Source: Fonticula alba ATCC 38817 (lineage: Eukaryota > Protista > Nucleariida). Taken from it: DNA of 9,695 bases. Positions 1 through 8,945 of this stretch are shown here, piece by piece. The stretch lies in assembly GCA_000388065.2 (NCBI GenBank), contig KB932230.1; one strand, written 5' to 3'. Both the position numbers and the translations under genes were made by a program. Under the pieces are notes generated by a model. The model made no database searches and was not told the DNA's origin. It saw only the letters and a program-made list of their open reading frames with translations. The stretch's first letter is position 1. Every line of letters starts with the position of its first letter.

Positions 1-184
1 CGGCCCCCGGCCGCTCGGTCCAGGGTCGATCGGGCGGAGCCAGGGGGGCGGGGGGCGCATTTTACGGCTCTTTCGTCCCCGCCCACCCCCCGGCATGCCA
101 GCCCCGCCACCGGTGACAAATGTTTGCTCGACAGCCGCGGCCGACCAGCCGGCCAGCCGGGACACAGCGAGGAGGGGGTCACAT

Positions 185-206
185 ACACACACACACACAC
201 ACACAC
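185..206. repeat. (AC)11 microsatellite
   Basis: Perfect AC repeat read directly. Confidence 0.95.
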
Positions 207-1033: not shown

Positions 1034-1277
1034 ATGGGCGCCGCTCAGGGGAGATTCCCCAAATTCGCCTCCCCCAAGTCCAGCACCTCGCAGGGGCCCC
1101 CGCCGCGACCGCAACAGCCACACCCTGGCGCCGGGCCCCCGGCTGGCCATGTGCAGCCCCCACCCACGGGGACCTCGGGCCCTTCGACCATCCCGCCAGC
1201 CGGCCTGGTCAGCGGCTTCGGCCTGACCGAGAAGAACGAGGAGGACCCCTGCCTCGAGTTTGAGGCCGGCCCATGGC
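1034..1277 (+). CDS. Exon 1 (MGAAQGRFPK...EEDPCLEFEAGPW), Pro-rich N-terminus
   Basis: 5' part of ORF 1034..1372. It ends at donor C|GTGCGT (1278), phase 1, matching acceptor ATGCACAG at 1448. The start codon is the least certain part (-3 is C, +4 is G). Confidence 0.72.
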
Positions 1278-4200
1278 GTGCGTCCTCCCCTCCCCCACCT
1301 CCGACGATCCTACTCCCTTTCTCCCCCCCTCCCCCCACTGTCTCCTGCCTGCCCTGTGGCCGTCTCTTCTGACCGTTGCCTGTATCGTCCTCACCATGTG
1401 TTCCCATGCACATTCCGCCCCTCTCCCCCCCCCCCCCCCCATGCACAGTGTCCCTCATCTCGTGGCGCGAAATCCCCCCCAATGAGTCGGCCGCCGATGA
1501 GGCCAAGGCTGCCACGGTGGCCGAGCCCGCCCTTCTGGTCGGCGCCTCGGCCAAGACCCCCCCCGTTTTGCCGACCGACAGTTCTGCCGTGGCGATCCCC
1601 TCGGAGGAGGCTACTGCTCCCGGGCCGGAGGATGCCGTCCCCGTCTCCCCGGCGGCCACCGAGGCCACAACTGCCTGGTCCTCATCGGCCAATGAGTTGT
1701 CCTTGCCCCGGCTGTCAACCGATCTTCCGGCCAACCTGCCGCCGACCTTCCTGCCGGCTCCGGTTGCTCCGGTTATCCAACAGTCTCCCACCTCCGCCAC
1801 GGCGCCCACTCTCCCGATTACCACCGGTGCGTGGTCGCTCGCCCACTCGCCCCCCCTGACACCCCCTCCCCCTCCTGCCTTCCCTGTCCTGCTCCCGTGC
1901 TAACTTGCTGATCCATGTTTCTGTCACTGCATGTGCATGTAAATGTATCCACGCCCCACGCCCACAGGAGGCGCTGCACCGCTCGATGGCTGGCGTTCCA
2001 GCTCGCCGGTCATCTCCGCTTCTCTGGTCGCCCGGGCCGAAGTGATCGCCGATCAGCCGCAGGACGGCCAGCCCGACGCCTCACCCGAGCCCGAGTCCCA
2101 GTCCCAGGCAAGCGATGATGACGATGATGACTCCTTCGAGGAGTTCTCCAGCACCGACTCGATCTCCTCGCTGGGCGGCTTTTCCGAGGACTCGGAGCAG
2201 CAGGAGCGTCTGGTCTTTGATCTGACTCTGCGCGTGAATGATGCCGTTCGCCTGGCCAGCCTCTCCTGCATGGCCACACCACAGACAACCCTCTGGTCCA
2301 AAGCGTCCGTCGGTCAGCCCTACCCCCTGGACAACCCGGCTGTGCGTGCCTCTCTCCGCCTCTCCTCCCTGCCTGCGTCTCCACCTCGTCCTAACCCATG
2401 GGTTATACCCCCCCCCCTGTACTCCCCCAATCCCCCCACACAACCAGGCGATGATGGGCAGTCTCCAGTCCTTCTCGACCGGGCCCTACACCGCCGGGCA
2501 GGTTATCACCGGTCGCGTGTCTTTCAACCTTCCTCTCGACCTGGAGCAGCGGCACTACTTCGCTTGTGTGCGTTCCCCTGCCTCCCCTCTGCCTGCTCTT
2601 GCGCCGGTCCCGGCATCTTGGCCCTAACCCCTCCCCCCCTTCCCTCGGGTGCCTTTCATCCTTTACACAGATCCTCGACCAGAATGGAACCATTCTTGCC
2701 AAGCTGCGGCTCCTCTTCTCCGGGCACATGCACCTGCCGGCCCGGCAGCAGCAGGCCGAGCGTGCCACCCGGCGCGAGCGTGACGCCTACCTGGAGCAGG
2801 TCCGCGAGGTCCTCGGGCAGGACGCCTACCGGGAGTACTTCGTCATTGGCCAGCGCTCCAGCATCAAGCCCAAAACCCGATTCATCTCGAATGATGCCGG
2901 CATCAAGCTGGCCTTCCACCTCTTCGAGCCGCAGACCACCGCGCCCCCGGCGGCATCGGCCGGCTCGGACCCCGCTGCCTCGGGGCCCGGCGACTCGCAC
3001 GACCCGGCCGGCTATACGGCCCCCACTGCGCTGGTGATCATTCCCTGCCATGTGTTGGCCCTGTTCGAATCGCTGGCCCGGCACATGGCCAGCCATGCCA
3101 GCTTTCCGGTTGTGGTGGCTCTTGTCGAGCTGCAGGGCTACGGCCAGAGTGACGGCCGCCGAGCCACCAGCGAGGACCGGCAGGATCTCTGGCGCGACTT
3201 GCGGTCTTTCATTCGCCACCTGAAAATTTCCTTCCCCTGCCTGCCGGTGGTCTTGGGAGGGGCCTTCCGCTTCAGCGGCCTCGTGCTGAATTACGCCACC
3301 TGGCGCCAGCGCGAGCCCATCAATGCCCTGTTCTTCCTGGCGCCGGATGTCTGCGACGAAACCAGCAACATGCAGGGGATCATGAATTTCCACAAGGACA
3401 TCCGCATCAAGGTCAACTGGACCACTCTGGCAGTCGGGGTGCTGACCGGCGGCCGAGTCCAGGGCGACCGCCCTGTGTATGAGCTCTCCTACCCGGAGGG
3501 CTTCACCCGCGCCGTGCCATCGGTGGTGGAGTCCGTCAGTGTGCGTTGCCTTGTTTTTCCCCCCCCCCCCTCTACATGTCCCCCCGGCCTTCGTCCATGG
3601 CCTCCATATTGATCCCCCACAATCCCCCCCCCCTCCCCCTCCCCCCTCCACGCCGCTCCAGATGAACAATCTCCTGGCCACACGCCCCGCCGATGCCCGG
3701 CGCCAGTTTGCCCAGCTGGATGTGCCGTTTGGCTTCTGGATTGGTGAGAACGACGAGTTCATCTTCTCCGAAAAGGCCTCTCTGATCCCGCATCAGGCCA
3801 TCATCTCGGCCCAGTGCCCGGTCAGCGTGCGCACGCACTCGGAAATCCGCATCTTGCCAGATCTCGGGCACTTTGCCATCCTCGGCACACCGGGTGCCAC
3901 GGCGGTTCTCCGGTGGATCCAGCGCGTCGTGCGCCAGGGCGTTGTCTTCCGGAACAGCATGCTCCGTCTGTCCCTCTGGTCGGCTTCCTGTCCGCTGCGT
4001 GCCGGTGCCAATCCCGTGGCGGCCAGTACCACCTCGGCCCCGGGGTCCGCCTCGTCAAGTCCCTTCCTCTCGGCGCCGCTCTTCCTGGGGTTCGGCGGCT
4101 CTGGCGATGTGTCTGGCTCGCATGAGTATGTCACCCCGCCGGCCGGGGGGACCGGGGTGTCGCCGGGCGCCCAGCGGGCCTGGGCGGCCCTGGCCGCTGC

Positions 4201-7200
4201 CTCCGGTGGCACTGGCCGCCCGGGGCACAACTTCGGCCCCGGCTGCTTGGCCCTGCCCTCGACGCCTGTTCCCCGGTCGATGTCCTTCTCGGTGTCCGGC
4301 CGGCGGCGGACGCACCTCTCCTCCGGCGGAGGGCCCATCCGGCCGGCGGGGCTTCTGCCGCTGGAGCAATTCCGCGTTTTGTCCCTCTCGCGCAACAAGG
4401 TCCTGGCCGAGCTCCGGCGCCTGTCCCGGTCGTCGGGGCTGGAGTTCGCGGCCGATGTGGCCGAGCAGGCGCGTGTCATCCTCTTCGACACGCGGGACTT
4501 CCTGCTGGCCGAGACCCATGGAGCTGGGGCTTTCTGTGCGGGGCTGGTGGCACATGTGCCCGCCGCCACGGCGGCCATCCTCGAAGAGCACCATACCCAC
4601 CACCCTGTGGGGACGTTGGGCGGGGCCGGTCCCGTTGGTGGCCGCAGTCGCAGTGGCAGCATCCTCGGTTCGCTGGCGGCCGTGGCCACTGGCGGGTCAG
4701 CCAGTCCGCCTGGGGGTTCTTCCTCGCGACGGGCGTCGCTCAGCGTGCCGGACCCCGGGGCCCGCGCGCGGTCCGGCTCCACGACCGGCCCGATGCCGGT
4801 GTTGCCGCCCACCTCGGCAGCCCGGCCAATCGGCGAGTCCTCCGACGCCGGGGGCTACTTCCTGAACAGTGACGCCGGGGAGACGGCCGCCCCCGGGCAC
4901 CTGGCTGGCATCGGGGCTGGAGCTGCCTGCGGCGGGTGCGAGGCCGAGGCATTGGAGCAATCTGCCGTGCAGGACCAACTGGCCCCGGGCCGGTATTACG
5001 CCGTCCGGCACTTGGTCCATGCGTGTGGCACATTGCAGCCCTTCCTCCAATTTGATCCGGATCCGGCTGTCGCGATGATGCCGGAGCCCGGCGAGGGCGA
5101 GCCTTCCGGGGGGGATACCCCGGAGCCCGAGCCGGACCGGGAGCCACCGGCGGCGGTCCCCTCCGCCGTGTCGCCCCTGCTGCCGGTTCCGGGGCTCACT
5201 TCCACCGGGGGCGGGGCCTCCATCTCGGAGATGCTGTCGCGATTCATCCCCTTCCCCGGGTCGTCTCGGAGTGCCGGGCCCGGTAGTGGGGCCGGACCCC
5301 CGATGTCGGCACCGGCCTCCCCGGCTCCGGACGCCAGGCCGGCCACGCCCCCGGCCTCGGAGGATTCCCCCTTGGCATCGGGATCCGGGTCCACGGAGCA
5401 GCATGTGTCCTCGCTGCCACCGCCGCCGGGGCCGGCTCCCTCGGTGGTGGCCATCCTCCTGGGTGGCCTCTGTACGGTGGGCCTGGCGCGAACCATCACC
5501 CAGCACTACCGGATCCGGGCCCTGGTGGACCTGGACACCGATGTCCTGGGCGGGGCATATGCCAGCATCCGTGGCCACACCCGGCTCCGGGTGCAGGAGC
5601 GCATCCGGCATCTGGTCAGGCACATGCGGTACAATGCGCCTGGCTGTCCGATTGTTCTGGTTGGCCATGGTGTGGGTGCTGCGCATGCGGTGCGCTACAG
5701 TCGCTGGCCCGAGCGCGAGCCCATTCACGGCCTGGTGCAGTTGGCCCCGGTGGCGGCCGACCTGCTGCGTGTGGACGCCGTGGTGTCGGCACTGGCCGAT
5801 GGCATGCAGTCGACCGACGCCGAGGCCTGGTCCGTCGAAGTGGCCACCGAGATCCCGGCTGCCCGTGGCGCAGTGCCACCCCCCCCGGCCTCGGTGGGGA
5901 GACCGGCCACGGGATCCGCCTCGGGGCATTATCAGTTCCCGGCGAACTTCGTCCCGCCGGCCTTCATCAACCCCTTCAACTATGGCATGGCCGTGTGTTC
6001 GGCAGCCGCGGCGGCCGGTGGCCCTGGCGATCCAGTCGGACATGGTGAGGTGGCTGCCTCGGCCCTGATCGAGAGTGCCGTTCGCAGTCGGTCCAGCTCC
6101 CTGGCCGACTGCCTGACCTCGGAGACGGTCTTCTTCGGTGGCCAGGGCACCGACTCGTGGGAGGTGATCAGCACCGTGAGCCCCGGCGCACCGCCGGAGT
6201 CCATGGCCCCAGGTGGCAGCCGGGCACAAACGGCCCCCTCCTCGCCGGAGCAGCGTGCGTCACTGGTCGCCGGGCAGCACCAGCAGCAGCAGCAGCACCA
6301 GCAACAGGCAGCCCGGTATCGGAGCACATCGCGCCCGGTATCTCTGCCCACCAGCGCCCCGGCGGCCTTGGCACCGGGGGAGGCGCGGGTCCTGGCCGCG
6401 GCGTCGGTGGCGGCCAGCGCGCCTGTCGGGGATCTTCTGTCGCATGCCATTGCTCACCTGGTGTCGGGTATTGATGTGGCCTGTGCCGTGTGGTCGGGTG
6501 ATGCGGATGAATTGACCGACCAGTCGCGCCTGGTGGAGGCCATTCGCAACAGCTGCACCATCGACAAGGCCCATGCGGCCATGGTGGTTGCGGGTCTCGG
6601 GGTGCCGGCCGCCAAGCCGGACACCAGCGGCAGCGGTGCCCCGTCCGGGGGCGCAGCATCCTCGGGCGTCGGTGGCGGGATTGCCGGCGGGGTGTCGCCC
6701 ATCACGCCCCCTGGGGGCGGTCCCTCGGCCGGCGCGGCGGGTTCTTCTCTGATCCCCGGGGCTGGCGCCGGTGCCGGTGCCTCTCCCTCCTCGTCGTCCT
6801 CCTCCACCGGCCTGGCCATGGGAGGTGTAGGTGGCCTCGGCGGGGGCGCCAATGCGGCCGCCACCAGCGTCGACCCGGCCACCGGCCAGCTGACCGACCT
6901 GTCCGTGAGCACCCTGCGCCAGGTGGAGCTCCTACATGGGACCTCCTACTTCAGCATCCTGCTCACGACCTCCCCTTCGGTTGGGGCCTGGATCAATGAG
7001 CTGGCGCAGTTGCTGTCGCCGCACTCCAGCCACTCGAGGCTATTTGGGCGTCTGGACGACCCGAAGGCCGTGGCGCGCTATGGGCCGCTGACCGGCGAGG
7101 CCTTTGAACGGCGGAGCATGCTCGGGCGCGGTGCCTTCGGCACGGTGCACCTGGTCCGGCACCGGCCCTCCGGTCGGACCATGGCCATGAAGGCCATGAG

Positions 7201-8551
7201 CAAGAATCGCCTTGGGCTGGCCGAGTTCCACAAGGACATCCTTGGGGCCATCCGCGAGCGCAATGTCCTGCGGGAGCTGGCGCACCCGTTCGTCGTGTCC
7301 TACTATGGGAGTTTCCAGGACGAGCGGCATCTCTTCATCCTGATGGAGTACATTGTTGGTGGCGAGGTGCGTCATGTGGAGGGCTTTTCCCCTCTGCCGG
7401 GCTGGGTGCCGGCTCTGGGTGATCTTACTGTGCCACGTGTGCTGGTCTCCCCCCCCCGGCCGCCACTCCATTTTCCTCTTCTCGCCCTTTTCTGACTCCC
7501 CCCTCGCTTGCCGGATTTGCCTGCACCCTCTGGAAAATGGCCACCATCCCTCCTCTCTCTCTCTCTCTCTCTCCCTCTGTCGCTGGGTGTGCCTCACTCG
7601 CAGATGTACACCCACCTCAAGGCCGAGCACCATTTCAGCGAGGCACGCGCGCGCTTCTACACCGCCGAGCTGATCCTCTTCCTGGAGTACCTGCACCAGC
7701 GCGGCCTGGTGTACCGGGACCTGAAGCCGGAAAATATCCTCATCGACGCGCAAGGGCACATCAAGGTCACGGACTTCGGCTTCACCCGGAGTCTGGTGCC
7801 CCGGCTGCCGGGCAGCGGTGATGGCCAGAGCACCGACACCGGGGGCTTGATCGGCTCCTCGGCGGTTGGCGGGACTGGCGGCGCGGCGGCGACGGCGGCG
7901 GCGGCGGCGGCCCCGGCCCCGCGCATGCTCGCCGGCGGCAGCGGCCCCCAAGGTGTCCTCATCCAGGCAACGCAGTCTTTCTGCGGCACGCCGGAGTACA
8001 TTTCGCCGGAGATGATTCGCAAGAACTTCTACACCTTCTCCACGGACCTCTGGTCGCTGGGCATCCTGGTGTATGAGATGCTCACTGGCGCCACGCCCTT
8101 CGCGCGCAGCCGCTCGCTGGAGGAGCTGTATGTGAACATCCTGCGCGCACCGATCGGCTACCCGAACACCATGAGCCCGCTGGCCAAGGACTTCATCCGG
8201 TCGCTGCTGCGCAAGGCTCCAGATGACCGCCTCGGCACGCGCCGGGGGATGATTGAGCTCCAGGAGCACCCCTGGTTCCGGGGGATCTCCTGGGAGCATC
8301 TCCGCCGTCGGGAGGTCGAGCCGCCCTTCGTGCCGCGCATCATGGGCGAGACCGACACCACGTACTTCCTAAGTGCGGCAGGGCCGCCGCCGGGGGCGGC
8401 CGCCGGGGGCAACCCCGGGTCGGCCGCCTCGGCTGCTGCCCCTCCGGCTGGACCCACCTTCTCCAACAGCGTGTGGGCTGACCATACGCTGCCTTCAGAC
8501 CCGAAGCGCCTTGCACCTGAGGTGTACACCACGCTCTTTGAGAGCTTCTAG
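1034..8551 (+). CDS. 7-exon gene for a 2212-aa protein: tandem degenerate alpha/beta-hydrolase domains fused to a C-terminal PKA-C-like AGC Ser/Thr kinase
   Basis: Splicing at six GTGCGT...CAG introns gives one uninterrupted frame of 6639 nt (intron phases 1,1,0,0,0,0). Two junctions fall inside recognisable domains and restore them: hydrolase ...ESVS|MNNL... and kinase ...MEYIVGGE|MYTHL.... An in-frame TAA at 977-979 lies upstream of ATG 1034, and TAG is at 8549-8551. Third codon positions are strongly G/C. Confidence 0.9.
1278..1448 (+). other. Spliceosomal intron 1 (171 nt)
   Basis: GTGCGT...ATGCACAG, branch-like TTCTGAC 1367-1373, C16 run 1425-1440, no internal AG. Confidence 0.78.
1449..1826 (+). 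CDS. Exon 2 (LSLISWREIPP...APTLPITT), Ala/Pro/Thr/Ser-rich linker
   Basis: Internal part of ORF 1376..1903, bounded by CAG (1446-1448) and G|GTGCGT (1827). Phase 1 at both ends. Confidence 0.8.
1827..1967 (+). other. Spliceosomal intron 2 (141 nt)
   Basis: GTGCGT...CCCACAG, branch-like TGCTAAC 1898-1904, no internal AG. Confidence 0.85.
1968..2341 (+). CDS. Exon 3 (GGAAPLDGW...YPLDNPA), including acidic tract DDDDDDSFEEF
   Basis: Part of ORF 1943..3037, between acceptor CCCACAG (1967) and donor GTGCGT (2342). Phase 1 in, phase 0 out. Confidence 0.85.
2342..2447 (+). other. Spliceosomal intron 3 (106 nt)
   Basis: GTGCGT...CAACCAG, branch-like TCCTAAC 2389-2395, C10 run 2408-2417, no internal AG. 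Confidence 0.85.
2448..2567 (+). CDS. Exon 4 (AMMGSLQSF...EQRHYFAC), 40 codons
   Basis: Part of ORF 2238..2627, between acceptor CAACCAG (2447) and donor GTGCGT (2568). Phase 0/0. Confidence 0.82.
2568..2670 (+). other. Spliceosomal intron 4 (103 nt)
   Basis: GTGCGT...TTACACAG, branch-like CCCTAAC 2622-2628, no internal AG. Confidence 0.85.
2671..3540 (+). CDS. Exon 5 (ILDQNGTIL...VVESVS), most of hydrolase repeat 1
   Basis: Part of ORF 2566..3612, between acceptor TTACACAG (2670) and donor GTGCGT (3541). Phase 0/0, 290 codons. Confidence 0.9.
2881..3935 (+). other. Protein domain: alpha/beta-hydrolase repeat 1 (Hydrolase_4/MAGL-like), nucleophile Ser absent
   Basis: DAGIKLAFHLFEP; ELQGYGQSDGRR (cf. 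DxRGHGxSxG); WRDLRSFIRHL; PVVLGGAFRFSGLVLNY at the nucleophile elbow; FFLAP; WIGENDE (Asp 3752); ILPDLGHFAIL (His 3869). Assigned by eye from motif order. Confidence 0.8.
3541..3661 (+). other. Spliceosomal intron 5 (121 nt)
   Basis: GTGCGT...GCTCCAG, branch-like ATTGAT 3608-3613, C12 run 3559-3570 and C10 run 3624-3633, no internal AG. Splicing joins the two parts of hydrolase 1. Confidence 0.88.
3662..7366 (+). CDS. Exon 6 (MNNLLATRP...MEYIVGGE): end of hydrolase 1, linker, hydrolase 2, kinase N-lobe
   Basis: Part of ORF 3479..7495, between acceptor GCTCCAG (3661) and donor GAG|GTGCGT (7367). Phase 0/0, 1235 codons. Confidence 0.9.
4980..7010 (+). other. Protein domain: alpha/beta-hydrolase repeat 2, split by long low-complexity inserts, Ser and His absent
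   Basis: VVAILLGG; ERIRHLVRHM; PGCPIVLVGHGVGAA (G-H-G-V-G, 5663-5677); YSRWPEREPIHGLVQLAP; WSGDADEL (Asp 6506); ELLHGTSYFSIL (Tyr 6947 at the His position). Motifs are colinear with repeat 1. Boundaries approximate. Confidence 0.7.
6275..6307 (+). repeat. Coding CAG-rich repeat (QHQQQQQHQQQ)
   Basis: CAG/CAC/CAA codons in exon 6, inside an insert of hydrolase repeat 2. Confidence 0.9.
7367..7603 (+). other. Spliceosomal intron 6 (237 nt)
   Basis: GTGCGT...CTCGCAG, branch-like TTCTGAC 7490-7496. Splicing gives MEYIVGGE-MYTHL, matching the PKA hinge pattern MEYVxGGE-[LM]FSHL. Confidence 0.95.
7553..7572. repeat. (CT)10 microsatellite in intron 6
   Basis: Read directly. Confidence 0.95.
7604..8551 (+). 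CDS. Exon 7 (MYTHLKAEHH...TTLFESF*): kinase C-lobe and AGC C-terminal tail
   Basis: Part of ORF 7508..8551, from acceptor CTCGCAG (7603). Contains YRDLKPEN, DFG, SFCGTPEY, DLWSLG and HPWF. Confidence 0.95.
   Translation: MYTHLKAEHHFSEARARFYTAELILFLEYLHQRGLVYRDLKPENILIDAQGHIKVTDFGFTRSLVPRLPGSGDGQSTDTGGLIGSSAVGGTGGAAATAAAAAAPAPRMLAGGSGPQGVLIQATQSFCGTPEYISPEMIRKNFYTFSTDLWSLGILVYEMLTGATPFARSRSLEELYVNILRAPIGYPNTMSPLAKDFIRSLLRKAPDDRLGTRRGMIELQEHPWFRGISWEHLRRREVEPPFVPRIMGETDTTYFLSAAGPPPGAAAGGNPGSAASAAAPPAGPTFSNSVWADHTLPSDPKRLAPEVYTTLFESF
7883..7912 (+). repeat. Coding GCG repeat (AAATAAAAAA) in the kinase activation-segment insert
   Basis: GCG codon run between DFG and SFCGT. Confidence 0.9.
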
Positions 8552-8881: not shown

Positions 8882-8907
8882 TGTATGTATGTGCGTGTAT
8901 GTGCATG

Positions 8908-8945
<38 letters not shown>

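What the first reader, a model, noticed from the sequence alone, without database searches (positions are those of the whole stretch)
2881..8551. Tandem pseudo-hydrolase domains fused to an intact PKA-like kinase: candidate ligand-sensing kinase
Seen: after splicing, one polypeptide carries two alpha/beta-hydrolase repeats with broken catalytic triads, followed by an AGC kinase with all catalytic motifs and a PKA-type terminal FxxF. I recognise no cyclic-nucleotide-binding, PH or C1 domain. Established: PKA-C is normally a stand-alone subunit controlled by a separate R subunit, while other AGC kinases carry their sensor in cis (PKG two cNMP domains, PKC C1/C2, Akt PH). Hydrolase folds with lost triad residues can serve as receptors or scaffolds (gibberellin receptor GID1 lacks the His; NDRG proteins and neuroligins are non-catalytic). 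Inference: the two dead lipase-like folds may bind a lipid or ester ligand and gate the kinase, a PKG-like layout with a different sensor. I cannot confirm novelty; similar architectures may already exist as automatic annotations.
Basis: partly seen in the sequence, partly recalled or inferred. Interest (0 to 1): 0.85.

Follow-up and report, generated by a model that had tools for sequence, protein, structure and literature searches.

The report
PKA-like kinase with two dead lipase domains
This Fonticula alba gene really encodes one 2212-residue protein in which two catalytically dead monoglyceride-lipase-like domains precede an intact PKA-like kinase, and the same uncharacterised layout is conserved in aphelids and ichthyosporeans, so it is an old, unstudied way of building a regulated kinase.

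Summary
Observation confirmed. Seven exons (1034-8551, + strand) give a 2212-aa protein identical to the public 'AGC protein kinase, variant [Fonticula alba]'. RNA contigs join exons 4/5 and 5/6, and intron 6 is absent from the RNA runs.

The domain order is:
- an MGxxxG N-terminus (myristoylation-type motif);
- a beta-sandwich domain;
- alpha/beta-hydrolase repeat 1, monoglyceride-lipase-like, with Phe571 at the nucleophile elbow and Asp693 and His732 kept;
- repeat 2, with Gly1332, Asp1611 and Tyr1758 at the triad positions and large low-complexity inserts;
- a kinase with every catalytic residue and a terminal FESF.

The new result is that this is a family, not a one-off. At least 16 representative proteins share the layout. 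Named sources are Paraphelidium, Amoeboaphelidium, Chromosphaera (two copies) and Amoebidium. Three checked homologues are single intronless ORFs.

No member has Ser at the repeat-1 nucleophile, although 93 of the 101 closest stand-alone hydrolases do. Repeat 2 usually has Gly there. The family kinase profile is closest to PKA-C.

The ligand-sensor reading is plausible but untested; scaffold or membrane-targeting roles fit equally well. I found no paper on this layout. Verdict: a new variant of a known kind (an AGC kinase with regulatory modules in the same chain), of moderate to high interest.

The parts
1034..8551 (+). Whole coding gene: 7 exons (1034-1277, 1449-1826, 1968-2341, 2448-2567, 2671-3540, 3662-7366, 7604-8551), 2212 aa plus stop
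   Evidence: The spliced translation is identical to P0001. Introns are all GTGCGT..CAG. An RNA contig in X4 joins exon 4 to exon 5 and skips 3541-3661. Exon 6 words are held at 1.00 in the RNA runs. Intron 6 words are at 0.00 in RNA runs and 0.91 in DNA runs.
1034..1054 (+). N-terminus MGAAQGR: N-myristoylation-type motif (Gly2, small residue at position 6)
   Evidence: MGxxx[S/T/C] starts 10 of the 15 aligned homologues, and Fonticula has MGAAQG. That it is myristoylated is an inference from the motif.
2198..2874 (+). Conserved N-terminal domain (aa ~285-440; spans introns 3 and 4): six-strand beta-sandwich followed by long helices
   Evidence: It aligns across the family. The AF2 model has pLDDT 71.3. 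It has no Pfam hit. Only weak, generic Ig/SKICH/arrestin-N-like fold matches were found, all E > 1e-3.
2881..3940 (+). Pseudo-hydrolase repeat 1 (aa 443-755; spans intron 5), monoglyceride-lipase-like alpha/beta-hydrolase fold with cap
   Evidence: Pfam Hydrolase_4 E 1e-11. Atlas feature score 0.98 to Hydrolase_4/Abhydrolase_1 clusters. AF2 pLDDT 91.4, pTM 0.89. Foldseek PDB best matches are MGLL, Rv0183 and Yju3p, E 3e-14.
3265..3267 (+). Phe571 at the nucleophile-elbow position of repeat 1 (G569-A-F-R-F573)
   Evidence: DSSP on the model gives strand 565-570, turn at 571 and helix 572-581. F571 aligns with the Ser of GGHSSG in 93 of 101 stand-alone relatives.
3752..3754 (+). Asp693, the retained acid position of repeat 1 (GENDE)
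   Evidence: Alignment to GxxDELFD of stand-alone relatives and to family members. In the model it lies in the loop after strand 685-690.
3869..3871 (+). His732, the retained histidine position of repeat 1 (LGHFAIL)
   Evidence: It aligns to HLSIL of stand-alone relatives. Among family members it is kept only in P0001, P0003, P0004, P0018 and P0082.
3941..5422 (+). Inter-repeat linker (aa 756-1249), mostly A/G/S/P low complexity and far longer than in homologues; holds the RRASL motif at 4727-4741
   Evidence: Composition A14 G13 S13 P11 %. The homologues' linkers are about 80 aa. RRASL is not conserved.
5423..7045 (+). Pseudo-hydrolase repeat 2 (aa ~1250-1790), an alpha/beta-hydrolase core broken up by two long low-complexity inserts (aa ~1380-1595 and ~1625-1740)
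   Evidence: BLASTP against repeat 1 E 6e-9. hhalign probability 100 %, E 2.6e-44. 12 of 15 family repeat-2 segments hit Hydrolase_4. Fonticula's own Pfam hit is only 18.9 bits.
5669..5671 (+). Gly1332 at the nucleophile position of repeat 2 (G-H-G-V-G)
6506..6508 (+). Asp1611, the retained acid position of repeat 2 (SGDADEL)
6947..6949 (+). Tyr1758 at the histidine position of repeat 2 (GTSYFSIL)
   Evidence: It aligns to SH/TH/GH of P0003, P0004, P0006 and P0018, and to HLSIL of the stand-alone profile.
7103..8548 (+). AGC kinase domain plus C-terminal tail (aa 1810-2212; spans intron 6, 7367-7603)
   Evidence: Pfam Pkinase E 9.5e-63. K1839 (7190-7192), E1861, D1936 (7718-7720), N1941, D1954 (7772-7774) and E2033 are all present. 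The family profile is closest to PKA-C among solved structures, 383 bits against 356 for Akt.
7787..7969 (+). Fonticula-specific ~60-aa G/A-rich insert in the activation segment (aa 1959-2019), followed by Ser2022 (7976-7978) at the PKA Thr197 position in S-F-C-G-T-P-E-Y
   Evidence: Homologues have about 10 residues here. Composition G22 A21 %.
8537..8551 (+). Terminal F-E-S-F (aa 2209-2212) and the stop codon
   Evidence: An FxxF (or close variant) at the very C-terminus occurs in most family members.

Best explanation
The window holds the Fonticula alba member of a conserved, uncharacterised family of opisthokont-protist kinases.

Shown:
- One polypeptide is built, in order, of an MGxxxS/T-type N-terminus, a small beta-sandwich domain, two paralogous monoglyceride-lipase-derived alpha/beta-hydrolase domains, and a PKA-type AGC kinase ending in FxxF-COOH.
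- Repeat 1 lacks the nucleophile serine in every member seen and has lost the oxyanion motif, so it is a pseudoenzyme.
- Repeat 2 lacks the serine in most members; in Fonticula it also lacks the histidine.
- The kinase keeps every catalytic residue and a PDK1-type activation-loop Ser.

Inferred mechanism: the protein is anchored to a membrane by N-myristoylation. The two dead lipase folds act as non-catalytic regulatory or targeting modules. Most likely they use what remains of the capped hydrophobic pocket, or their surfaces, to bind a lipid, a membrane or a partner. In that way they would set where and when the attached PKA-like kinase is active, in place of a separate cAMP-binding R subunit.

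Fonticula's copy is a divergent, insert-laden version, about 1000 aa longer than its relatives because of A/G/S/P-rich inserts.
For: One polypeptide:
- Exon 6 is a single 3705-nt ORF that runs from the end of repeat 1 through repeat 2 into the kinase N-lobe.
- A spliced RNA contig covers exons 4, 5 and 6.
- Intron 6 is absent from the RNA runs.
- Three homologues (P0013, P0020, P0006) are single intronless ORFs on eukaryotic contigs.

Family:
- An exhaustive HMMER search with repeat 1 found 200 hits. About 16 of them are long proteins with Hydrolase_4 plus C-terminal Pkinase; in most a second hydrolase stretch is matched.
- Named members are Paraphelidium tribonemae, Amoeboaphelidium protococcarum, Chromosphaera perkinsii (two copies) and Amoebidium parasiticum.

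Dead hydrolases:
- Family alignments and the DSSP elbow position.
- The contrast with stand-alone relatives, 93 of 101 of which have H-S at the elbow plus HGGG, D and H.

Fold: AF2 pLDDT 91.4 with monoglyceride lipases as best matches; repeat 2 by hhalign, E 2.6e-44.

Kinase type:
- PKA-C is the top match of the family profile.
- In the tree, all 16 family kinases plus 6 DFGF/FxxF-COOH kinases are split from 47 Akt/SGK-type and other rows with 100 % SH-aLRT support.
- The DFGF and GDTxNF tail motifs are present.

Myristoylation motif.
Against: - No binding, localisation or activity data exist. Nothing computed here shows that the hydrolase folds touch or control the kinase.
- Bulky F/Y at the repeat-1 nucleophile position and loss of the oxyanion motif may occlude the ancestral substrate site.
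- Repeat 2 of one member (P0006: GHSFG plus Asp plus His) may still be catalytic, so 'non-catalytic' is not a rule for the whole family.
- Fonticula's position 6 is Gly rather than Ser/Thr, and 5 of the 15 aligned homologues lack the MG start (possibly mis-called starts).
- Whether Fonticula's repeat 2 folds at all, with its ~330 aa of inserts, was not modelled.
- The E6-E7 junction was not seen directly in a read, because a filter blocked 7699-7734.
Confidence: 0.6

Rival explanations
1. Strict ligand-gated kinase. One or both dead lipase folds bind a small lipid or ester such as a monoacylglycerol or lysophospholipid. Binding allosterically releases the kinase, as cGMP does in PKG.
For: - There are two tandem homologous domains N-terminal to a PKA/PKG-type kinase, which is the same topology as PKG.
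- Repeat 1 keeps a confidently modelled cap over the core and resembles MGL with its lipid tunnel.
- The fold has been conserved across Holomycota and Holozoa despite loss of catalysis.
- From established knowledge: GID1, D14/KAI2 and ABHD5 show that alpha/beta-hydrolase folds can act as ligand receptors.
Against: - There is no conserved pseudosubstrate. RRASL at aa 1018 is unique to Fonticula.
- Residues at the elbow vary widely among members (F/Y/L/G/A/H), which is not what a conserved ligand site would show.
- The oxyanion motif is lost.
- No interface or pocket could be inspected with these tools.
Confidence: 0.25
2. Scaffold or localisation module only. The beta-sandwich and the dead hydrolase folds are inert protein-protein or membrane-docking surfaces that place a constitutively active kinase. 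They carry no allosteric control.
For: - The conserved N-terminal MGxxxS/T motif and the beta-sandwich domain suggest targeting.
- From established knowledge: other dead alpha/beta-hydrolases (neuroligins, NDRG) work as adhesion or scaffold proteins.
- Fonticula tolerates ~1000 aa of disordered inserts between and within the domains. That is easier to reconcile with beads on a string than with a tight allosteric assembly.
Against: - Two hydrolase folds have been retained in fixed order, with strongly conserved motifs (RGxGxSGGxRG, LNY, EPVDG). This points to more than generic bulk.
- No partner is known.
Confidence: 0.3
3. Bifunctional enzyme. At least one repeat still hydrolyses an ester, through a non-canonical nucleophile or through repeat 2, and the kinase is coupled to that reaction.
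For: - Repeat 2 of P0006 has GHSFG with Asp and His. P0018 has a Ser at the nucleophile position.
- Fonticula's repeat 1 keeps Asp693 and His732.
Against: - Fonticula has Phe571 and Gly1332 at the nucleophile positions and Tyr1758 at the repeat-2 histidine position.
- No family member has Ser in repeat 1.
- The HGGG oxyanion motif is absent in both repeats.
Confidence: 0.05
4. Annotation artefact. Two neighbouring genes, a hydrolase and a kinase, have been merged by the gene model.
For: GC-rich genomes give long spurious ORFs; for example, antisense ORFs of 510 aa occur in this window.
Against: - Exon 6 carries repeat 2 and the kinase N-lobe in one frame with homology on both sides.
- Homologues from five other named species have the same order.
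- Three homologues are intronless single ORFs.
- The RNA evidence supports the spliced model.
Confidence: 0.02

Closest known systems
cAMP-dependent protein kinase catalytic subunit (PKA-C; also PRKX and PKG kinase domains)
   Same: - PKA-C is the best solved match of the family kinase profile (383 bits, E ~1e-113).
- Shared motifs are DFGF after the catalytic loop, a GDTxNF-type tail motif, a truncated hydrophobic motif FxxF at the very C-terminus, and an activation-loop S/T-x-C-G-T-P-E-Y.
- The protein has an N-terminal MG start, as myristoylated PKA-C alpha does.
   Different: - PKA-C is about 350 aa and is controlled in trans by R subunits. Here about 1800 aa (about 830 in homologues) precede the kinase in the same chain, and there is no cNMP-binding domain.
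- Fonticula's own kinase is no closer to PKA than to Akt. It has TDTTYF in the tail and a 60-aa activation-loop insert.
cGMP-dependent protein kinase (PKG)
   Same: Two tandem homologous regulatory-type domains sit N-terminal to a PKA-type kinase in one chain.
   Different: The tandem domains here are alpha/beta-hydrolase folds, not cyclic-nucleotide-binding domains (PF00027 not found). No conserved autoinhibitory pseudosubstrate was found.
Monoglyceride lipase / lysophospholipase-type alpha/beta-hydrolases (Pfam Hydrolase_4, PF12146; human MGLL, M. tuberculosis Rv0183, yeast Yju3p)
   Same: - The core fold and cap are the same (Foldseek E 3e-14, TM 0.58-0.74).
- The DxRGxGxSxG loop, the GxxDE acid loop and, in repeat 1, the His loop are shared.
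- The nearest stand-alone relatives are auto-named acylglycerol lipase or lysophospholipase.
   Different: The nucleophile Ser is replaced by Phe571 in repeat 1 and Gly1332 in repeat 2. The HG oxyanion motif is lost. The repeat-2 His is replaced by Tyr1758. The domains are fused in tandem to a kinase.
Non-catalytic alpha/beta-hydrolase folds used as receptors or scaffolds (GID1, ABHD5/CGI-58, neuroligins, NDRG); recalled from the literature, not tested here
   Same: The hydrolase fold is kept while one or more triad residues are lost, so a non-enzymatic role is expected.
   Different: None of those is fused to a protein kinase. No sequence relationship beyond the superfamily was tested. Ligand binding here is unproven.
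Oomycete 'Arb2 + Pkinase' proteins (ESM Atlas cluster, 245 members, ~698 aa)
   Same: This is the best feature-based look-alike of the compact homologue P0004 (score 0.91). It has a non-kinase N-terminal domain (Arb2, which as I recall has an alpha/beta esterase-like fold) followed by a kinase.
   Different: It is only a language-model lead. There is no alignment or E-value, the Pfam family is different, there is one N-terminal domain rather than two, and homology to this family was not tested.

Membership tests
AGC protein kinases, PKA/PKG/PRKX-like branch | Complete eukaryotic protein kinase catalytic core (GxGxxG, VAIK Lys, alphaC Glu, HRD/YRD Asp, Asn, DFG, APE Glu, subdomain XI Arg) | tested here: met
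   G1817/G1819/G1822, K1839, E1861, D1936, N1941, D1954, E2033 and R2106. All lie in invariant columns of the family alignment. Pfam Pkinase E 9.5e-63.
AGC protein kinases, PKA/PKG/PRKX-like branch | AGC C-terminal tail with a hydrophobic motif; in PKA-type kinases it is truncated to FxxF at the C-terminus | tested here: met
   The protein ends ...TLFESF. Family members end in FDQF, FKDF, FAEF, FDDF, FQNF, FEDF and similar. The tail motif PPFxPxxxxxGDTxNF is conserved; Fonticula has PPFVPRIMGETDTTYF.
AGC protein kinases, PKA/PKG/PRKX-like branch | Closer to PKA-C than to other AGC subfamilies | tested here: inconclusive
   - Family profile: PKA-C 383 bits against Akt 356 bits.
- Tree: the family groups with DFGF/FxxF-COOH kinases at 100 % SH-aLRT.
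- Fonticula alone: Akt1 240 bits, TPK1 236, PKA-C alpha 233.
- No named PKA, PKG or PRKX reference sequences were available for the tree.
AGC protein kinases, PKA/PKG/PRKX-like branch | Regulation by cAMP through R subunits | not testable with these tools
   There is no cNMP-binding domain in cis. Binding of a separate R subunit cannot be assessed from sequence here.
Alpha/beta-hydrolase fold, Hydrolase_4 (monoglyceride-lipase-like) | Alpha/beta-hydrolase core fold with cap | tested here: met
   Repeat 1: Pfam 45 bits against a 27-bit cut-off, AF2 pLDDT 91.4, Foldseek best matches MGLL/Rv0183 at E 3e-14. Repeat 2: hhalign probability 100 %, E 2.6e-44; no structure was modelled for Fonticula's repeat 2.
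Alpha/beta-hydrolase fold, Hydrolase_4 (monoglyceride-lipase-like) | Catalytic triad Ser (in GxSxG) - Asp - His | tested here: not met
   Repeat 1 has F571 / D693 / H732. Repeat 2 has G1332 / D1611 / Y1758. So these are members of the fold family, not of the enzyme class.
Alpha/beta-hydrolase fold, Hydrolase_4 (monoglyceride-lipase-like) | HG(GG) oxyanion-hole motif after strand beta3 | tested here: not met
   Stand-alone relatives have HGGGA. Fonticula's repeat 1 has IIPCHV and repeat 2 has ILLGGLC. Family members vary at this site.
PKG-type cis-regulated kinases | Tandem cyclic-nucleotide-binding domains (PF00027) and an autoinhibitory pseudosubstrate | tested here: not met
   No PF00027 hit at E <= 1. 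No conserved RRx[SAG]-hydrophobic motif exists across the family.
Ligand-receptor pseudo-hydrolases (GID1/D14-like in function) | Specific small-molecule binding in the capped pocket that changes partner or effector activity | not testable with these tools
   Model coordinates cannot be inspected and no binding data exist.
N-myristoylated proteins | Met-Gly start with a small or uncharged residue at position 3 and Ser/Thr/Ala/Gly/Cys/Asn at position 6 | tested here: met
   Fonticula has MGAAQGR. MGxxx[S/T/C] occurs in 10 of the 15 aligned homologues. Actual lipidation was not tested.

The most novel reading that the evidence does not exclude
The family is a new class of second-messenger-gated kinase. 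In it, a PKA-type catalytic domain is switched by a lipid (for example a monoacylglycerol or lysophospholipid) bound to dead monoglyceride-lipase domains at the membrane. It would have been inherited from the opisthokont ancestor and lost in animals and Dikarya. That would be a lipid analogue of PKG, built from pseudoenzymes.
Probability: 0.2. Interest if true: 0.85.

Novelty: new variant of a known kind. Interest (0 to 1): 0.6.

Why it matters
AGC kinases are textbook examples of how a conserved catalytic core is coupled to different sensors: cNMP domains, C1/C2, PH.

This family adds a layout I could not find described. It pairs tandem catalytically dead lipase folds, a beta-sandwich and a myristoylation-type start with a PKA-type kinase. 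It is conserved in lineages on both sides of the animal-fungus split: Fonticula and aphelids on one side, ichthyosporeans on the other.

If the dead folds bind a ligand or a membrane, three things would follow:
- a new route from lipid signals to PKA-type phosphorylation;
- a clean natural example of pseudoenzyme domains recruited as regulators;
- a marker gene for reconstructing signalling in the opisthokont ancestor.

Even if they are only scaffolds, the family-wide loss of the repeat-1 nucleophile with retention of the fold is a well-defined pseudoenzyme case that can be tested with simple constructs.

Tried and rejected
1. Word-indexed protein search with exon 6. It returned only the protein itself, because low-complexity words swamped the candidate list. 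This says nothing about homologues.
2. Word-indexed search with the family alignment. It returned only P0004 plus unrelated kinases, so it was useless for taxonomic range.
3. First read-laying run. The second call laid only part of exon 6, so the exon 6-7 junction was not seen directly. I used word shares of intron 6 instead.
4. Conserved pseudosubstrate. Fonticula has a Kemptide-like RRASL at aa 1018, but no homologue has one at an aligned place. Rejected as a family feature.
5. N-terminal domain identity. Foldseek against PDB and AFDB clusters gave only generic beta-sandwich matches with E > 1e-3 and TM < 0.6, so no family was assigned.
6. NCBIfam on the repeats and the nearest stand-alone hydrolases found nothing above cut-off.
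7. Repeat tree. Most repeat-1 segments group together, most repeat-2 segments group together, and the stand-alone enzymes form one clade (95 % SH-aLRT). The backbone support is weak (54-85) and branches are long. This is consistent with one duplication before the family spread but does not prove it.
8. Literature. No paper on this architecture or on these accessions was found in the held library.
9. tRNA, Rfam and tandem-repeat scans of the window found only microsatellites.
10. Ser574, three residues after the elbow, as an alternative nucleophile. Rejected: it lies inside helix 572-581 of the model and is not conserved.


Full report
WHAT IS IN THE WINDOW

The window is 65-73 % G+C. On the + strand it carries one long interrupted reading frame. 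From the sequence I placed six introns, each starting GTGCGT and ending CAG. The seven exons are 1034-1277, 1449-1826, 1968-2341, 2448-2567, 2671-3540, 3662-7366 and 7604-8551. Together they splice to 6639 nt, which is 2212 codons plus a stop. The translation is identical to P0001, a public protein named 'AGC protein kinase, variant [Fonticula alba]', with PF00069, PF07714 and PF12146 on record. The organism is therefore the cellular slime mould-like amoeba Fonticula alba, a relative of fungi.

IS IT ONE PRODUCT?

- Exon 6 alone is a 3705-nt open frame. It contains the end of hydrolase repeat 1, all of repeat 2 and the N-lobe of the kinase.
- Four small 2012 runs of the same organism behave as RNA. 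In X4, one 3047-nt contig carries the end of exon 4 directly before 2671, skips 3541-3661 (GT..AG) and runs on to 4696. It has 1142 nt upstream of exon 5, and exons 1-4 sum to 1116 nt.
- These runs hold 99-100 % of the sampled words of exon 6 and none of intron 6. DNA runs of the organism hold 91 % of intron 6.
- The exon 6-7 junction was not seen in a laid read, because a filter blocked 7699-7734.
- Independent support comes from homologues. P0013, P0020 and P0006 are single uninterrupted ORFs on eukaryotic contigs with the same domain order.
- A gene-merging artefact is therefore very unlikely.

THE TWO HYDROLASE REPEATS

Repeat 1 (aa 443-755):
- It passes Pfam Hydrolase_4 (45 bits, E 1e-11).
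- A language-model search puts it among Hydrolase_4/Abhydrolase_1 clusters at 0.98.
- With a 97-sequence alignment, AlphaFold2 gives pLDDT 91.4 and pTM 0.89.
- The best solved matches are human, mycobacterial and yeast monoglyceride lipases (Foldseek E 3e-14 to 1e-10, TM up to 0.74).

Repeat 2 (aa ~1250-1790):
- It is below Pfam's cut-off in Fonticula (18.5-18.9 bits).
- It matches repeat 1 by BLASTP (E 6e-9 over 53 ungapped residues).
- As a family profile it matches the repeat-1/stand-alone profile over the whole domain (hhalign 100 %, E 2.6e-44, 259 columns).
- 12 of 15 family repeat-2 segments hit Hydrolase_4 on their own.
- In Fonticula the core is split by two inserts rich in A/G/S/P, at aa ~1380-1595 and ~1625-1740.

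ARE THE TRIADS BROKEN?

Yes.
- The 101 closest stand-alone relatives found by an exhaustive HMMER search mostly carry HGGGA, GGHSSGAG, GxxDELFD and HLSIL. Of these, 93 have His-Ser at the elbow.
- In Fonticula's repeat 1 the Ser column holds Phe571 (G-A-F-R-F). In the model, residues 565-570 are a strand, 571 is the turn and 572-581 a helix, which is the nucleophile-elbow geometry. Asp693 and His732 are kept.
- In repeat 2 the three positions hold Gly1332 (G-H-G-V-G), Asp1611 and Tyr1758.
- The oxyanion HG motif is missing in both repeats.
- All coordinates were checked against the spliced sequence.

THE KINASE

- Pfam Pkinase scores E 9.5e-63.
- All catalytic residues are present and sit in invariant columns of the family alignment.
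- The activation segment carries a Fonticula-only insert of about 60 G/A-rich residues. It then reads S2022-F-C-G-T-P-E-Y, the usual PDK1-type site.
- The chain ends in FESF.
- Against solved structures, Fonticula's domain scores the same for Akt1, yeast TPK1 and PKA-C alpha (240, 236 and 233 bits). Its best stand-alone database hits are a mix of Akt, SGK and RSK types at 40 % identity or less.
- At family level the picture sharpens. The 13-sequence profile hits PKA-C first (383 bits), 27 bits above Akt.
- The family consensus has DFGFA and GDTxNF, and ends in FxxF.
- In a quick maximum-likelihood tree, all 16 family kinases plus six DFGF/FxxF-COOH kinases are separated from 47 Akt/SGK-type and other rows with 100 % SH-aLRT support.
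- 'PKA-like' is therefore fair for the family. I had no named PKA, PKG or PRKX references for the tree.

THE MAIN NEW RESULT: A CONSERVED FAMILY

- The HMMER search of 1.84 billion representatives with repeat 1 returned 200 hits. About 16 of them are proteins of 834-1384 aa.
- Of the seven long hits scanned with Pfam, five show two hydrolase stretches plus a C-terminal Pkinase; P0013 and P0020 show one hydrolase stretch.
- Names recovered are Paraphelidium tribonemae, Amoeboaphelidium protococcarum (KAI3649756.1 and three near-copies), Chromosphaera perkinsii (two paralogues) and Amoebidium parasiticum. The rest come from unnamed assemblies and metagenomes. One is auto-named 'protein kinase A'.
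- The layout therefore occurs in Holomycota (Fonticula, aphelids) and Holozoa (ichthyosporeans). In the kinase tree the ichthyosporean sequences group apart from the aphelid/Fonticula ones. This is what inheritance from an early opisthokont would give, but that is an inference.
- Across the family the repeat-1 nucleophile column is never Ser (F/Y/L/G/A/H), and its His is kept in only five members.
- Repeat 2 mostly has Gly. P0006 has GHSFG with Asp and His, and P0018 has a Ser, so some repeat-2 copies may still be enzymes.
- A repeat tree groups most repeat-1 segments together and most repeat-2 segments together, with the stand-alone enzymes as a separate clade. The backbone support is weak.

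- The N-terminus: 10 of the 15 aligned homologues start MGxxx[S/T/C], and Fonticula starts MGAAQG. This is the N-myristoylation pattern.
- A weakly conserved domain lies before repeat 1 (Fonticula aa ~285-440). It models as a six-strand beta-sandwich followed by long helices (pLDDT 71). It has no significant fold match and no Pfam hit.

HOW IT PROBABLY WORKS

Shown: the domain order, the dead triads, the intact kinase and the conservation.

Inferred: a membrane-anchored PKA-type kinase whose N-terminal half, consisting of the beta-sandwich and two pseudo-lipase folds, targets and/or regulates it.

I cannot separate three versions of this:
- a scaffold or targeting module without allostery (about 0.3);
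- a mixture of the two.

For a ligand: the capped MGL-like fold is retained for a very long time without catalysis. Against a conserved ester-type site: the residues at the elbow vary, bulky aromatics often fill the nucleophile position, the oxyanion motif is gone, and there is no conserved pseudosubstrate (the RRASL at aa 1018 is private to Fonticula). Residual hydrolase activity in Fonticula is unlikely (about 0.05).

COMPARISON WITH WHAT IS KNOWN

- The kinase works like, and is probably a member of, the PKA/PKG/PRKX branch.
- The repeats are members of the Hydrolase_4 fold family but fail the enzyme's defining triad.
- The overall topology resembles PKG but fails its defining cNMP domains.
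- A feature-based Atlas search with the compact homologue pointed to an oomycete 'Arb2 + Pkinase' cluster of 245 members. That is an untested lead to another esterase-like-fold-plus-kinase layout.
- I found no paper on this architecture. Public names are generic ('AGC protein kinase, variant', 'hypothetical protein', 'putative cAMP-dependent protein kinase catalytic subunit').

VERDICT

It is a new variant of a known kind. It is already auto-annotated in sequence databases but, in the paper library I could search, I found no description of it as a family. Interest 0.6.

Noticed in passing
window 1278-1448, 1827-1967, 2342-2447, 2568-2670, 3541-3661, 7367-7603: All six introns start with the same hexamer GTGCGT and end CAG. 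They are 103-237 nt long and C/T-rich.
   Followed up: partly
window 4727-4741 (aa 1018-1022): RRASL, a perfect Kemptide-like PKA consensus site, sits in the low-complexity linker between the repeats. No homologue has it at an aligned place, so it may be a lineage-specific autophosphorylation site or chance.
   Followed up: partly
window 7787-7969 (aa 1959-2019): A ~60-residue Gly/Ala-rich insert lies inside the kinase activation segment. It is absent from all homologues, and its effect on activation-loop function is unknown.
   Followed up: partly
P0006 (locus L003:3001-6660), repeat 2 around aa 700: One unnamed homologue keeps GHSFG plus the Asp and His in repeat 2. It may be a true hydrolase-kinase bifunctional protein and a useful contrast for experiments.
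   Followed up: partly
window 3941-5422, 5813-6460, 6548-6895: Fonticula's protein is about 1000 aa longer than its relatives because of A/G/S/P-rich inserts between and inside the domains, including a poly-Gln run near 6274-6303. They are kept in frame within one 3.7-kb exon.
   Followed up: partly
window 183-206, 349-399, 640-657, 8882-8945: Microsatellites flank the gene: (CA)n, (CCCCCG)x8.8, (CT)n and (TG)n.
   Followed up: no
window 4697-6229 (- strand) and other antisense ORFs: Long antisense ORFs (up to 510 aa) overlap the coding exon. They have Arg/Gly/Pro-rich, homology-free translations and look like by-products of the high G+C content.
   Followed up: no
ESM Atlas cluster: Oomycetes have a 245-member cluster of ~698-aa proteins with an Arb2 domain followed by a kinase. 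This may be an independent or related esterase-fold-plus-kinase layout.
   Followed up: no
L001 7079-7300 and L002 1410-1658: In two unrelated homologue loci a small EF-hand protein gene lies next to the hydrolase-kinase gene. This may be chance; it was not checked in Fonticula, where the window ends about 1.1 kb after the stop.
   Followed up: no
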